From assembly GCF_006345805.1 (NCBI RefSeq), contig NW_021829374.1, forward strand, positions 1-6,377: a stretch of 6,377 bases of DNA, read 5' to 3'. A model generated the notes under the pieces. That model saw nothing but the letters and a program-made list of their open reading frames with translations, ran no database searches and was not told the DNA's origin. The number at the start of each line of letters is the position of its first letter. Position 1 is the first letter of the stretch. Position numbers and translations under genes: made by a program. This document shows, in pieces, positions 1-4,907 of the stretch. Origin of the DNA: Octopus sinensis. Lineage: Eukaryota.

Positions 1-113
1 CGGTCATTCGGTTGCTTTTCGTGCTTGTGTTTTGTATATTTGGTTATATCATATTTTCGTTGTTGTGGTAGCATTAGAACTTAGTGAACCCTGATTAAGA
101 AGAACTATAACGA

Positions 114-725
114 ATCCCAGAGGATTTTTGCCTTCCCCTTTTCGTCCATTACCTTTTCCTATATACGTTGGTACCAAGCATTCGTAACCTCATATCCATA
201 CTTATGGCGTAGTATCTAGTGGAGGTTTTGGGCTACTTTGTCGTGTCTACATTTGTACTCTTTCTGCGCAAGACTTTCACAAGCACTAACAACGAGCGTC
301 ACATTTTCCACCCTCTTCCTACACAATCTACAGGGGTTCGATACATTTGTGTGTTCTATATTCTTTTTCTGGTGCTAGGCCACGGCGATTAGGCTTTCAG
401 TATTTTATTTTAGGTCACTCTTCTGGAGCCACCTCCATGATGCTCCCTGGTTTTTCAACTTATTGGCTTGACAATGGAACTGATCACGTAATTCCATACG
501 GAGTAGGGTTTCTTCTCTCTCGTTGGTTGTTCTTTTTCGGAATTCATGAGCACTCACAAGTCCACCTTTGTTAACCCCTTCTGCACTAGCAGCATACTGT
601 AGCAAGTCTTTGCTGTTTACCAAATATTCTACCATATTTCTTCATTCACTGTTGATGCTATTCCGTACGCTAATCAGCCCAGGTCCACCCTTAACTTTCT
701 TCATGCAGAGCCTGTGTACATTTGC
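114..725 (-). pseudogene. Post-RT linker, degenerate CCHC zinc knuckle and start of restriction-like endonuclease region, disabled
   Basis: ANVHRLCMKKVKGGPGLISV resumes at 725. In-frame stops at 642-644, 375-377, 216-218 and 159-161, and a frameshift near 405. The knuckle is C-X2-C-X8-(H>L, codon at 294-296)-X4-C. RHD and KILWD are present; no PD..D motif follows. Confidence 0.85.
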
Positions 726-1100
726 GTCCCCAAAGTCTATCCCCTCCTCACCGTGGTGGGGACGCTGGCAACGGATAGTGTCAGAGCTATGCCGTCGGGA
801 ACTTCGGTTCCTGGTAGGGCCACCCAAGGCGGATTGGTCTAACACCGAGTGGTATTAGGGCCACAACCCGGCAGACGGGGTTTCTGGTGAAAATCCTCGG
901 AGTGTCTGTTTCGGCAACCGGCGGCTCCTCGGTCGTTCTGTCCCTGCGTCTGCGGACAATCTGCGGCAAACAGGATGTCTCTACATGCGGGTTTGTTGGG
1001 GACCGCTTGTAAAATCCACATATTCCCACGAAACTTCTTCCATGGTAGAAGAAGCCGACTCAACCCGCCCAGGGTGAATGTCACCACAAGTAAGTAAGTA
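725..1100 (+). mobile_element. Non-tRNA SINE-like retroposon, copy 1 (putatively RTE-mobilised)
   Basis: Interrupts the LINE ORF. TSD TACATTTGC at 717-725 and 1106-1114, extendable to GTGTACATTTGC / GTGTATACATTTGC with a TA slip. 3' tail AAGTAAGTAAGTA (1088-1100). About 95% identical by hand alignment to the reverse complement of 3650-4002. No A/B box seen. Confidence 0.9.
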
Positions 1101-1640
1101 GTGTATACATTTGCCTTAAGGTGGAGGGCACCATGCATTGTCATTGTCTTTCGGGTAGTGCGATCGAGTTGGTCAATCTTCGCTTGCGTCCATTTCAGGA
1201 TGGGTGCAGTATAGAGGACTACAGCAACAGCCCATATATTGATGACAGTCACAAGGTTCTCTGAGTTGAGTTATGACTTCAAGAGAAGTTTGAGGCGCTT
1301 GAAATATGCAGTCATGACTTAGTCTTTCATTTCTCTGTGCAAGATATTGTCCAGCTCCAGGATCCCAAGGTACCTGTACCCATCATCATTCGGGTCTTCT
1401 ATTCCCTCTCCGTTTGGCAATTCTATGCCCCTACAACCTGCTCTTTTCCCCTCGCTTCAAAGTGAGTACCGCACACTTCGAGATACCGAATTCCATCCCT
1501 ATATCTTTGCTGCACATTTGCACAGTCTCAAGGACCCTCTCCATTTCAGCCTTTGCTTTGTGAACAGCTTTCAATCATCCTTGAAGTGAAGGTGGTTGGA
1601 GACAAGATCCGTCCTTTCTCAGCTCATAGTGCACTTTGAT
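1101..1640 (-). pseudogene. Reverse transcriptase C-terminal half (domains 5-7 and thumb), disabled
   Basis: In-frame stops at 1571-1573, 1319-1321 and 1271-1273, and about three frameshifts near 1600, 1553 and 1445. ORF 839..1252 is the thumb part (INIWAV...HGALHLKANVY) running into the insertion. Confidence 0.9.
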
Positions 1641-1673: not shown

Positions 1674-1864
1674 CTGAACGAAAAGCTTAGCGGTATTTCG
1701 CCCGTCGCTACGTTCTGAGTTCAAATCCCGCCGAGGTCGGCTTCGCCTTTCATCCTTTCGGGGGTCGATAAAATTATTACCAGTCAAGTACTGGGATCGA
1801 TGTAAATCGACTTCATCCCTTCCCCATAATTTGAGGTCTTGTGCTTCCAGTAGAAAGGATTAAT
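1674..1864 (+). mobile_element. tRNA-derived SINE, 5'-truncated, with Meta-domain-like core and (ATT)n tail
   Basis: B box GTTCAAATC at 1719-1727. Core GCCTTTCATCCTTTCGGGGGTCGATAAAATTATTACCAG (1746-1783) matches my recollection of the MetaSINE-type domain and of a very abundant octopus SINE. Runs directly into (ATT)n. No A box upstream. Confidence 0.8.
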
Positions 1865-2637: not shown

Positions 2638-3262
2638 TACATACATACGCACATACATACATACATACATACATACATACATACATACATGCATGCATGC
2701 ATACATAGATGCATACATAGATGCATACATACATACATACATGCATACATACATGCATACATACATGCATACATACATACATGCATACATGCATACATAC
2801 ATACATACATACATACATTCATGCATGCATACATAGATGCATACATACATGCATACATGCATACATACATACATACATACATAACATACATACATGCATG
2901 CATACATAGATGCATACATACATGCATACATACATACATACATGCATGCATACATAGATGCATACATACATGCAGACATGCATACATGCATACATGCATA
3001 CATACATACATACATGCATGCATACATAGATGCATACACATACATACATACATACATACATGCATGCATACATAGATGCATACATACATGCAGACATGCA
3101 TACATGCATACATACATACATGCATACATGCATACATACATACATACATGCATATACATGCATACATACATATATAGAAGCATACATACATACATATATA
3201 CATACATACATACATACGCACATACATACATGCATGTACGCATGCACACACATACAGACATA
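2638..3262 (+). repeat. (CATA/CATG)n tetranucleotide array with higher-order structure
   Basis: About 620 bp of CATA interspersed with CATG, TAGA and CAGA variants. Confidence 0.98.
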
Positions 3263-3493: not shown

Positions 3494-3649
3494 AAATTGG
3501 AATTTTAAATCCTAATCTCTATAGGAACTTTTTTTCATTTCAAGAAAACATTGAATTTGAATGACTTTTAATTTTTTCGATTATAGATAACAACTCGGTC
3601 TGTAGCTTCTGAGCGCGAGTTATTGGCTACAATTACATACTTGAAGTTA

Positions 3650-4002
3650 CTTATTTGTACATGTGGCGACATTTACCCTGGGCGGGTTGAGTCGGCCTCT
3701 TTTACTCACGGAAGAAGTTTCGTGGGAATATGTGGACTTCACAAGCGGTCCCCAACAATCCCGCATGTGGAGACATCCTGTTTGCCGCAGATTGTCCGCA
3801 GACGCAGGGACAGAACGACCGAGTAGCCGCCGGATTTTCACCAGAGCCCCGTCTGCCGGGTTGTGGCCCTAATACCACTCGGTGTCAGACCAATCCGCCT
3901 TGGTTGGCCCTACCAGGAACCGAAGTTCCCGACGGCATAGCTCTGACACTACCCGTTGCCAGCGTCCCCACCACGGTGAGGAGGAGATGGACTTTGGGGA
4001 CG
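3650..4002 (-). mobile_element. Non-tRNA SINE-like retroposon, copy 2
   Basis: Perfect 14-bp TSD CATACTTGAAGTTA at 3636-3649 and 4003-4016. Same 5' start (CGTCCCCAAAG) as copy 1. Tail ...ACATGTACAAATAAG. Lacks the 23-nt segment 897-919 of copy 1. Confidence 0.93.
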
Positions 4003-4114
4003 CATACTTGAAGTTAGTGTTGGGAGAACTTAAATCAGCTTGCAAATACTCGTTCACTTTACTAAATTTATACTCGGGCTAAGCCTGACAGCCCCGATGT
4101 CGGAGTCGCCATTG

Positions 4115-4172: not shown

Positions 4173-4622
4173 ACATCAAGGAACGGCCATAATAGGCCAT
4201 TCACCCACTAGAAATAACAGCCAAAGCTTCAACCGCAAATAAAAGTCAATTCCGTAAACAGGAGAAAATTTAAAAAACATTTACCCTGTAATTTCTTACG
4301 GTTTCACCGTTTCATCTGCTGTTTAATGGTAAACTAACCTGATTAAATTAAATCAAGCATCTTCCATAGCCCTCAGATTCTTCAGTAAGAAATAGCCACA
4401 AGTCGGAACAGATATTTTCACGAGGCATTTCCGACCCTGCCAAGGTAATATCTGACCTAAAATTTTCAAATCATCGCACTCGCGCCAAATTTATCGGCAG
4501 CAAATAAATATAAGCCGTCGATTCCATTACGGAATTAACCAGAAAATTCATAATTAATCAATATAGGGTGGCAAAAAAATTCTGTAGAATTCTTTTGCCA
4601 CCAGCGGCCTAGTGGGAAAAAA
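4171..4622 (-). mobile_element. Putative non-autonomous Helentron-type element (HINE-like)
   Basis: The minus strand reads 5' T6 - subTIR CCCACTAG (4609-4616) - 36-bp palindrome (4567-4602) ... subTIR CTAGTGGG (4204-4211) - stem-loop GAATGGCC-TATTAT-GGCCGTTC (4181-4202) - CTTGATGTTG 3'. This is the HINE/DINE-1 layout. No TSD seen. Confidence 0.6.
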
Positions 4623-4650: not shown

Positions 4651-4907
4651 CAACATCAACAATCAAGGAACGGCCATAATAGGCCATTCACCCACTAGAA
4701 ATAACAGCCAAAGCTTCAACCGCAAATAAAAGTCAATTCCGTAAACAGGAGAAAATTTAAAAAACATTTACCCTGTAATTTCTTATACGGTTCACCGTTT
4801 CATCTGCTGTTTAATGGTAAACTAACCTGATTAAATTAAATCAAGCCAATCTTCCATAGGCCCTCAGATTCTTCAGTAAGAAATAGCCACAAGTCGGAAC
4901 AGATATT
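4651..4907 (-). repeat. Partial tandem copy (257 bp) of 4171-4416
   Basis: Identical to 4171-4416 except five or six small indels (net +11 nt) and no substitutions. Retains the subTIR (4691-4698) and the stem-loop. Confidence 0.97.

What the first reader, a model, noticed from the sequence alone, without database searches (positions are those of the whole stretch)
725..1100. Possibly undescribed non-tRNA short retroposon family: two full-length copies in one 6-kb window
Seen: 725-1100 (+) and 3650-4002 (-) differ by about 16 substitutions, two 1-nt indels and one 23-nt indel by hand count. Each has its own TSD and a TAAG-type tail, both begin at the same base (CGTCCCCAAAG), and neither shows a Pol III A/B box or a recognisable ORF. 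Established: short tandem tails such as (TAAG)n with variable-length TSDs are typical of RTE-clade LINEs and their dependents. Inference: a non-autonomous element built from a structured LINE 5' leader joined to a LINE-recognised 3' end, rather than a tRNA/7SL/5S head. I do not recognise it, but it may already be in Dfam/Repbase.
Basis: partly seen in the sequence, partly recalled or inferred. Interest (0 to 1): 0.75.

Follow-up and report, generated by a model that had tools for sequence, protein, structure and literature searches.

The report
Short retroposon with possible ribozyme head
The two repeats are copies of a real, high-copy short retroposon of an octopus-like genome that has no tRNA-type head; its first 81 bases fit a hepatitis-delta-like self-cutting RNA whose cut site is the element's first base, but distant relatives lack that fold, so the ribozyme is only about even odds.

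Summary
Window 724-1100 (+) and 3650-4003 (-) are two copies of one ~379-nt element. They differ by 18 substitutions and gaps of 1, 23, 1 and 2 nt. Each has its own target-site duplication and an (ACAAGT)n(AAGT)n tail.

The family is dispersed, with 300-440 exact hits per 22-mer and at least 1,500 first-look candidates. Sampled copies lie about 3% from their consensus. About 77% of copies found by their 3' end are full length. The same family and boundaries occur in runs of three further organism labels. It is not tRNA/7SL/5S-derived, has no ORF, and is not a set of LINE 3' fragments.

From that G, 81 nt can fold as an HDV-like double pseudoknot. It is the only Rfam hit here, but weak (18 bits against a threshold of 44). 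Chance is about 1 in 1,000 on a descriptor written after seeing the sequence.

Against this, there is no covariation within the family, and distant relatives carry a shorter head that cannot form the fold. No LINE parent was found.

Earlier notes of this scan report HDV-like heads on LINEs in this genome. One note on a 377-bp element, possibly this family, judged its ribozyme to be chance.

The parts
724..1100 (+). Copy A of the ~379-nt retroposon (full length, about 2.2% from the family consensus)
714..723 (+). 5' copy of the target-site duplication of copy A (GTGTACATTT). The target continues with GC, matching the element's first two bases.
1101..1112 (+). 3' copy of the target-site duplication of copy A (GTGTATACATTT, with one 2-nt indel)
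724..804 (+). Candidate HDV-like ribozyme head of copy A. P1 is 724-730 with 759-765. P2 is 733-736 plus 740-743 with 797-804. P3 is 744-747 with 755-758 and contains one U.U mismatch. L3 is 748-754 (UCACCGU). P1.1 is 749-750 with 766-767. J1.1/4 (GCAA) is 768-771. P4 is 772-778 with 787-794.
   Evidence: Rfam RF02682 match 724-791, starting at G724. Own descriptor scan.
796..796 (+). Candidate catalytic cytosine (C73 of the element), two bases after P4
   Evidence: Position in the model. Not tested by experiment.
798..811 (+). Stable GGAAC-UUCG-GUUCC hairpin that overlaps the 3' strand of the proposed P2 and would compete with it
   Evidence: Minimum-free-energy folds
895..917 (+). 23 nt present in copy A and in the family consensus but absent from copy B
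1034..1054 (+). 3' hairpin (CTTCTTC, loop, GAAGAAG). The loop is the site of a 15-20-nt insertion in a younger subfamily.
1048..1085 (+). Conserved 3' module. It is shared by all size variants, by the younger subfamily and by distant relatives, and is presumed to be the recognition site for the partner reverse transcriptase.
1086..1100 (+). Short tandem tail ACAAGTAAGTAAGTA. The number of units varies among copies.
3650..4003 (-). Copy B of the retroposon (full length, lacks the 23 nt). Its candidate ribozyme head is 3923-4003.
4004..4016 (-). Target-site duplication of copy B, on the element's 5' side (TAACTTCAAGTAT on the minus strand)
3637..3649 (-). Target-site duplication of copy B, on the element's 3' side

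Best explanation
Both repeats are insertions of a high-copy, non-coding, non-autonomous non-LTR retroposon of about 379 nt.

Shown: copies are made by target-primed reverse transcription from an RNA whose 5' end is fixed at one G. The evidence is TSDs of 5-16 bp, a tail of variable unit number that often overlaps the target by 1-5 nt, 1-2 nt of G/GC microhomology at the 5' junction, 5'-inverted copies, and composite copies that look like template jumps.

Inferred: a still unidentified 'stringent' LINE supplies the enzyme and recognises the conserved 3' hairpin, module and tail.

Inferred, at about even odds: the element has no promoter head. Its RNA would be released from any longer host transcript by an HDV-like self-cleaving ribozyme formed by nt 1-81, which cuts just 5' of G1. 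This would make it a dispersed counterpart of the ribozyme-headed SIDE and NARTc elements.
For: Family and mechanism:
- 1,563 first-look candidates, with the 40 scored at 93-96% identity.
- Exact 22-mer counts of 301 (head), 347 (body) and 436 (3' module).
- Mean 3.0% divergence from the consensus in 46 copies.
- 23 of 30 copies fetched by their 3' end are full length, and three of the rest carry 5' inversions.
- TSDs, microhomology and extra T's before G1.
- One composite insert is enclosed by a single TSD.
- The same boundaries appear in runs of three further organism labels.
- Head and 3' module are kept while the middle varies, with head-to-module distances of 172-460 nt.

Ribozyme:
- The only Rfam match in 700-1125 is an HDV family. 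It starts exactly at G724 and aligns P1, P3, L3, P1.1 and GGCAAC. The same match recurs in L003.
- A full P1/P1.1/P2/P3/P4 plus C model fits at position 1 of the consensus.
- 1 of 3,000 dinucleotide shuffles pass anywhere and none pass at position 1. There are 2 complex-sequence hits in 391 kb of background.
- With P1 and everything downstream fixed, shuffling only nt 8-35 passes 182 times in 200,000.
Against: - The Rfam score is far below the gathering threshold (18.1 and 15.6 bits against 44). Across all families the E-value is about 0.5-1.
- My descriptor was written after seeing the sequence.
- The model departs from the standard fold. P3 has a U.U mismatch, J4/2 is only UC, and a very stable UUCG hairpin competes with P2.
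- There is no covariation inside the family. Differences are singletons and 92.4% of cells are paired, the same as in the shuffles.
- Most distant relatives found through spurious ORFs carry a head about 13 nt shorter. Read back with free third codon bases, that head cannot satisfy even a relaxed HDV descriptor.
- An earlier follow-up of this scan (s1-112418) on a 377-bp element, possibly this same family, called the fold a chance pattern.
- No LINE parent was found.
- No raw RNA reads were available, so no 5' ends of RNA were seen.
Confidence: 0.5

Rival explanations
1. It is the same high-copy non-tRNA retroposon, but the head is only a structured 5' hairpin. That hairpin could be part of an internal promoter, a protein-binding site, or a decayed relic of a ribozyme. 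The fixed 5' end at G1 would then come from transcription initiation, and the HDV-like fit would be coincidental.
For: - Distant relatives keep the tail, 3' module and core, and also a G+C-rich 5' terminus starting GC..CCCC. They lack the ~16 nt that make P3 and L3, and they cannot form the fold.
- There is no covariation.
- The Rfam score is below threshold.
- A competing UUCG hairpin overlaps P2.
- An earlier follow-up, s1-112418, reached this verdict on a 377-bp element that is possibly the same family.
Against: - Given the hairpin and the downstream sequence, a random 28-nt interior gives P3 + L3 + P1.1 + P2 only about 0.09% of the time.
- The one Rfam family that matches is an HDV family, and it starts on the element's first base.
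- GGCAAC directly after the P1 3' strand, a P4 hairpin and a C two bases later are HDV hallmarks.
- No promoter motif was identified.
Confidence: 0.4
2. The copies are 5'-truncated 3' UTR fragments of an autonomous LINE and not a family of their own.
For: The tandem tail and variable TSDs are LINE-like.
Against: - 23 of 30 copies found by the 3' end alone start within 15 nt of the same 5' base.
- No head-to-module distance is in the kilobase range.
- The reading frame through the 3' module is open for only 37-175 aa.
Confidence: 0.02
3. It is a classical Pol III SINE with a diverged tRNA, 5S, 7SL or snRNA head.
For: It is short, non-coding and high-copy.
Against: - ARAGORN finds no tRNA in the window.
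- Permissive Rfam searches of copy A (700-1125) and of the first 200 nt of the L003 copy find no small-RNA family.
- The only box-like words (AGTGG, GGTTC) lie in the wrong order. This is from direct reading.
Confidence: 0.03

Closest known systems
R2 SIDEs and R2/R1 hybrid SIDEs of Drosophila (Eickbush & Eickbush 2012, PMC3414825)
   Same: They are short non-coding non-LTR elements made of a 5' HDV-like ribozyme plus a 3' end recognised by a LINE protein. They have no promoter of their own, a precise 5' end, and template-jump products at 5' junctions.
   Different: SIDEs are rare and site-specific in rDNA, and they are demonstrably derived from known R2/R1 parents. This family is dispersed, has hundreds to thousands of copies with variable TSDs, and has no identified parent. 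Its ribozyme is unproven.
NARTc / RIME / SIDER with the L1Tc ribozyme (Pr77 hallmark) of trypanosomatids (PMC3185411, PMC3383444, PMC4035085)
   Same: They are dispersed, abundant non-autonomous derivatives that carry an HDV-like ribozyme in their first ~77 nt.
   Different: Those occur in protists and share their first 77 nt with a known autonomous LINE. That segment is also a promoter, and cleavage was shown in vitro. None of these points is established here.
HDV-like ribozymes at 5' ends of animal LINEs (R2, RTE, Baggins; Ruminski et al. 2011, cited in PMC4908430; paper not held)
   Same: The cleavage site is the first base of the element, and the RNA is released from co-transcripts.
   Different: Those head autonomous elements of several kilobases. 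Here the element is 379 nt and non-coding.
HDV ribozyme of Faecalibacterium prausnitzii, Rfam RF02682
   Same: It is the best-matching curated model. It shares a G-C first pair in P1, a 7-nt L3 ending in CGU, a two-pair P1.1 directly after P1 followed by GCAA, and then P4.
   Different: The score is 18 bits against a gathering score of 44, and the P4 and J4/2 parts do not align. It is bacterial, so the likeness is in fold type and does not indicate descent.

Membership tests
HDV-like self-cleaving ribozymes | Nested double pseudoknot in the order P1, P2, P3, L3, P3', P1', P1.1, P4, J4/2, P2' | tested here: met
   All helices can be drawn on nt 1-81 of the consensus and of copy A. The departures are a U.U mismatch in P3 and a 3-nt bulge in P2.
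HDV-like self-cleaving ribozymes | Cleavage site immediately 5' of the first base of P1, which becomes the RNA 5' end | tested here: met
   This is indirect evidence. Retrotransposed copies begin at G1 of P1, including copies where that G is not in the TSD and copies at template-jump junctions. RNA ends themselves were not seen.
HDV-like self-cleaving ribozymes | Catalytic C in J4/2 just after P4 | tested here: inconclusive
   C73 (window 796) is in place. However, J4/2 is only UC in the best model, where known members have C plus about three bases (the latter from my own knowledge). The register of P2 is ambiguous.
HDV-like self-cleaving ribozymes | Score at or above the curated threshold of an Rfam HDV family | tested here: not met
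   RF02682 scores 18.1 bits and 15.6 bits against a gathering score of 44. No other HDV family was listed at E <= 10.
HDV-like self-cleaving ribozymes | The fold is kept in relatives through compensatory changes | tested here: not met
   Within the family there are only singleton changes and no covariation. Distant relatives have a shorter head that is incompatible with the fold. Their DNA could not be fetched.
HDV-like self-cleaving ribozymes | Self-cleavage activity | not testable with these tools
   This needs an in vitro transcription and cleavage assay.
Classical SINE (Pol III, tRNA/7SL/5S head) | Head derived from a Pol III gene, with internal A and B boxes | tested here: not met
   No tRNA was found and no small-RNA Rfam match.
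Classical SINE (Pol III, tRNA/7SL/5S head) | Short, non-coding, dispersed, with TSDs and a LINE-type 3' tail | tested here: met
SIDE / NARTc type (internally deleted LINE) | 5' and 3' ends shared with an autonomous LINE of the same genome | tested here: inconclusive
   None was seen in 60 loci or in the coordinate tables. The search was limited to the best-scoring candidates, and no further genome letters could be fetched.
RTE-dependent retroposon | 3' end shared with an RTE-clade LINE | not tested
   Only the tail type speaks for it. No RTE sequence of this genome could be read.

The most novel reading that the evidence does not exclude
This may be a promoter-less, ribozyme-headed SINE-like family that has spread to at least hundreds, probably thousands, of dispersed copies in octopus genomes. 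It may still be active, since a younger subfamily has 3' modules that are 100% identical over 71 nt. The HDV core would have been gained or lost through a ~16-nt P3-L3 indel relative to relatives in other species. If so, the birth or death of a ribozyme is captured within one retroposon superfamily.
Probability: 0.3. Interest if true: 0.65.

Novelty: new member of a known kind. Interest (0 to 1): 0.42.

Why it matters
If the head cleaves, this would be a dispersed, high-copy animal retroposon whose 5' end is made by a ribozyme and not by a Pol III promoter. Until now that design is known from rare rDNA-specific SIDEs and from trypanosomatid elements. It would explain how some of the many 'unclassified SINE' families reported for Octopus (893 families in PMC13282606) are expressed without a promoter.

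It would also give a large natural set of full-length insertions for studying how 5' junctions are sealed, through G/GC microhomology, added T's and template jumps.

If the head does not cleave, the finding is an ordinary unclassified SINE-like family. The useful lesson would then be that an HDV-like drawing at a retroposon start needs relatives or a bench test.

Tried and rejected
1. LINE partner.
- A search with the last 90 nt returned only copies of this element.
- nhmmer of the consensus against all 60 loci and the window found no weaker relatives.
- A scan for the tail in other contexts found none.
- A loose end at 1043 in the laid contigs looked like a LINE 3' end. Pattern counts and coordinates showed it is a younger subfamily of the same element with the same head 300-420 nt upstream.
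- The frame through the module is not the end of a long ORF.

2. Covariation. There is none inside the family.

3. RNA 5' ends. All runs were Logan contigs, which cannot show starts.

P0008 was a spurious repeat protein.

5. Literature.
- No paper holds HDV-like + ribozyme + octopus.
- Element words are absent from the held text of the supplements of PMC9115989; several files, including the transcriptome FASTA, were cut when stored.
- Ruminski 2011 is not held.

6. Whole-window Rfam search. It gave only microsatellite artefacts.

7. Bacterial promoter and terminator scan. It is not relevant to this genome.

Full report
**Observation**

The window holds two copies of one element in opposite orientation.
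- Copy A is 724-1100 (+) and copy B is 3650-4003 (-).
- Over 380 aligned columns they differ by 18 substitutions and gap runs of 1, 23, 1 and 2 nt.
- The 23 nt at 895-917 are present in copy A and in the family consensus, and missing from copy B.
- Copy A is flanked by GTGTACATTT (714-723) and GTGTATACATTT (1101-1112).
- Copy B is flanked by a 13-nt duplication at 3637-3649 and 4004-4016.

**A real, dispersed family**

The window belongs to a 2.72-Gb assembly of 13,516 contigs. From memory, that size, contig number and repeat content fit an Octopus assembly. Earlier notes of this scan also call it octopus. I did not verify the species.
- The element gave 1,563 first-look candidates. All 40 that were scored were 93-96% identical and almost all full length.
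- Exact 22-mers occur 301 times (nt 6-27), 347 times (nt 284-305) and 436 times (nt 336-357). Reversed control patterns gave zero.
- These words survive in about 60% of my sampled copies, and my sample is the best-preserved fraction. The family therefore has at least several hundred and probably over a thousand copies.
- Forty-six distinct near-full copies lie on average 3.0% (range 1.1-6.7%) from their consensus. Their differences are almost all singletons, which means neutral decay after insertion.
- Contigs of public runs carrying four coded organism labels hold the same family. In the four runs laid, which are three further labels plus one possible RNA run, depth rises at 720-734 and falls after 1094. 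Loose ends after 1092 read CAAGTAAGTA followed by unrelated sequence.

**Not LINE fragments, not a Pol III SINE**

Thirty loci were fetched with the last 90 nt alone, so they were not selected for 5' completeness. All are this element.
- 23 start within 15 nt of the same 5' base and 7 are truncated at nt 32-199.
- Three of the truncated copies (L035, L056, L037) carry an inverted 5' piece, as in twin priming.

ARAGORN finds no tRNA. Permissive Rfam searches of copy A (700-1125) and of the first 200 nt of the L003 copy find no tRNA, 5S, 7SL or snRNA. The ORFs have no Pfam domain.

**How copies are made (shown by the junctions)**

- TSDs are 5-16 bp with no common target word.
- In about half of the copies the TSD runs 1-5 nt into the tail. 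This fits priming by annealing of the nicked target to the tail repeats.
- The tail varies in unit number: CAAGTA one to three times, then AGTA or AAGTA.
- At the 5' junction the base before CGTCCCC is G in about 85% of copies. In L002, L003, L012, L022 and L007 that G is absent from the 3' copy of the TSD, so it belongs to the element.
- In many other copies the target itself continues with G or GC. This is microhomology with the element's first bases.
- A few copies have one or two extra T's before the G.
- L008/L009 (one locus duplicated) and a locus on C25 have nt 1-187 of a second copy joined directly to G1 of a full copy; a pair of heads 187 nt apart on C10 (coordinates only) suggests another.
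- In L013 a single 11-nt TSD encloses a partial head, a piece of another repeat and a full copy. These look like template jumps at the end of the RNA.

The template RNA therefore ends at G1 (window 724, and the complement of 4003 in copy B).

**The head**

Reading the first 81 nt, I recognised the layout of an HDV-like ribozyme before running any model. Rfam then gave exactly one match in 700-1125 at E <= 10.
- The match is RF02682, the HDV ribozyme of F. prausnitzii, at 724-791.
- It starts at G724 and aligns P1 (GCGUCCC/GGGACGC), P3, a 7-nt L3 (UCACCGU), the two bases after P1, and GGCAAC.
- The same match, starting at G1, recurs in L003.
- The score is weak, 18.1 and 15.6 bits against a gathering score of 44. 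Over all 4,227 families the E-value is 0.5-1.
- What makes it notable is that the one family hit is an HDV family, and that it begins on the element's first base.

A full model can be written on the consensus:

| Part | Positions (element nt) |
|---|---|
| P1 | 1-7 with 36-42 |
| J1/2 | C8 A9 |
| P2 | 10-13 and 17-20 with 74-81 (3-nt bulge) |
| P3 | 21-24 with 32-35 (U22.U34 mismatch) |
| L3 | 25-31 |
| P1.1 | C26-G44 and A27-U43 |
| J1.1/4 | GCAA, 45-48 |
| P4 | 49-55 with 64-71 (G68 bulged) |
| Candidate catalytic C | C73 |

Copy A has A52 where the consensus has G52. Both pair with U67.

A descriptor coding these rules gave the following results:
- It hits position 1 of the consensus.
- It hits 12 genomic copies at their 5' end.
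- It hits only two A+T-rich places in 391 kb of non-repetitive background.
- 1 of 3,000 dinucleotide shuffles of nt 1-140 pass anywhere, and none pass at position 1.
- With P1 and everything from nt 36 onward fixed, shuffling only nt 8-35 passes 182 times in 200,000.

The descriptor was written after I had seen the sequence, so these figures flatter the model somewhat.

**What speaks against a working ribozyme**

1. J4/2 is only UC in the best model. A very stable GGAAC-UUCG-GUUCC hairpin (nt 75-88) competes with the 3' strand of P2.

2. The family offers no covariation. 92.4% of cells are paired, the same as in shuffles of partners among the sequences. That is expected for dead copies and says nothing either way.

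3. Distant relatives do not share the fold.
- A profile-free search of 1.84 billion representative proteins with the spurious antisense ORF of copy B found 15 hits at 36-75% identity. One of them, P0008, is a spurious repeat protein. The others are spurious translations of diverged copies; the nine of them looked up lie on ENA contigs.
- Several of them share the tail and 3' module (antisense ...LLTCTC..HPGRVE..ASS...), and nearly all share the core (...CQTNPPWVALPGTEVPDGIALALPVAT...).
- Eight then end in ...ALPRWGGVGL or a close variant and diverge after it. Ours reads ...SVPTTVRRRWTLG.
- Read back to the sense strand, that head again starts GC..CCCC and again has a G-rich strand before GGCAAC. 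It is about 13 nt shorter and lacks the stretch that makes P3 and L3.
- With every unknown third codon base left free, it cannot satisfy even a relaxed HDV descriptor. There were 0 solutions, while our head passes.
- In this genome the best match to such a protein is at most 74% identical, and most matches stop at ...PVAT; those that run further read through stop codons. These relatives therefore come from other species.

4. Its follow-up judged the fold a chance pattern that relatives do not share. That note made me look for relatives. I confirm that relatives do not share the fold. I do not think chance is a sufficient account of a 1-in-1,000 fit that begins on the first base.

**Weighing**

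A deletion of the P3-L3 hairpin in another lineage would give exactly the relatives' head. It would leave GGCAAC, P4 and the C as relics. The reverse is also possible: a 16-nt insertion that happened to complete a ribozyme. In either case the relatives show that elements of this superfamily can spread without the fold. I put the working-ribozyme reading at about 0.5. I put the reading of a structured hairpin, relic or promoter at about 0.4.

**Partner LINE**

No partner LINE was found.
- A sequence joined to the last ~55 nt in the laid contigs looked like a LINE end. It belongs to 168-207 copies that carry a 15-20-nt insertion in the loop of the 3' hairpin.
- Many of these copies are 100% identical over 71 nt.
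- Their coordinates show the same head 300-420 nt upstream, for example at C2:133533404, C5:37580104, C7:6931405 and C6:11013618. It is therefore a younger subfamily of this element.
- Among 69 exact heads on the six largest contigs, 26 have an exact 3' module on the same strand, at 172-460 nt and never at kilobase distance.
- Head and module are thus kept while the middle varies: there are variants of -150, -23, +23 and +110-130 nt. This is what one expects if only the two ends matter.

Later genome searches gave tables only.
- The sequencing runs were contigs only.
- I built a family consensus of this non-coding retroposon in scratch for analysis only, and I do not print it here.

**Comparison and novelty**

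HDV-like ribozymes at LINE 5' ends, and non-autonomous derivatives that keep them, are known. Examples are the R2 SIDEs (PMC3414825) and NARTc/RIME with the L1Tc ribozyme (PMC3185411, PMC3383444, PMC4035085). I found no paper linking HDV-like ribozymes with octopus. Octopus repeat annotations list hundreds of 'unclassified SINE' families (PMC13282606).

This is at most a new member of a known kind. It would be unusual for being dispersed and high-copy in an animal. If the head does not cleave, it is an ordinary unclassified SINE-like family.

Noticed in passing
window 1-723 and 1101-1640, minus strand: Copy A sits inside a decayed LINE fragment in antisense orientation. The broken frames carry reverse-transcriptase C-terminal-like words (GYRYLGILELD, INIWAVAVVLYTAPILKW, KKVKGGPGLISV, CRLCRKRVENV...HDKVAQNLH). 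It is not the partner of the short element as far as can be seen.
   Followed up: partly
window 4175-4416 and 4662-4907: A ~245-bp direct repeat that is 100% identical within blocks (three 1-3-nt indels), spaced 487-491 bp apart. Both copies are bordered by (TA)n runs. It may be a young duplication or a tandem non-coding element.
   Followed up: no
window 1675-1860 and 1943-1975: tRNA-like pieces with B-box-like words (GAGTTCAAATCC, GGGTTCGATTCC). They are embedded in or next to long (ATT)n/(AAT)n arrays that face each other as inverted repeats (1860-2340). They are probably remnants of tRNA-derived SINEs. ARAGORN calls no tRNA here.
   Followed up: partly
window 2640-3240: A 600-bp (CATA)n/(CATG)n array. 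It produces dozens of false microRNA and snoRNA matches in a permissive Rfam search.
   Followed up: yes
G000 places such as C5:37580104, C7:6931405, C6:11013618 (not read): A younger subfamily of the same element has a 15-20-nt insertion (…CATGGTTCGAGATGCCTCGAGGG…) in the 3' hairpin loop. There are 168-207 exact copies, and many are 100% identical over 71 nt. Some are about 110 nt longer in the middle. It may still be active.
   Followed up: partly
L008/L009 (G000:C29:6726660-6727218 and C29:3665927-3666485), G000:C25:2758737-2759288, G000:C10:698697-698905: In L008/L009 and the C25 locus, nt 1-187 of one copy are joined directly to G1 of a full copy; on C10 two exact heads lie 187 nt apart (coordinates only). 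This is either a recurrent template jump or a small dimeric subfamily with two heads.
   Followed up: partly
protein P0009 (ENA contig, species unknown): In another species a diverged copy of the element lies antisense directly after a Penelope-like reverse-transcriptase fragment (…YVDDTFVLW…FRKPTFTGQYLNFKSFHP…), so one spurious ORF runs through both.
   Followed up: no
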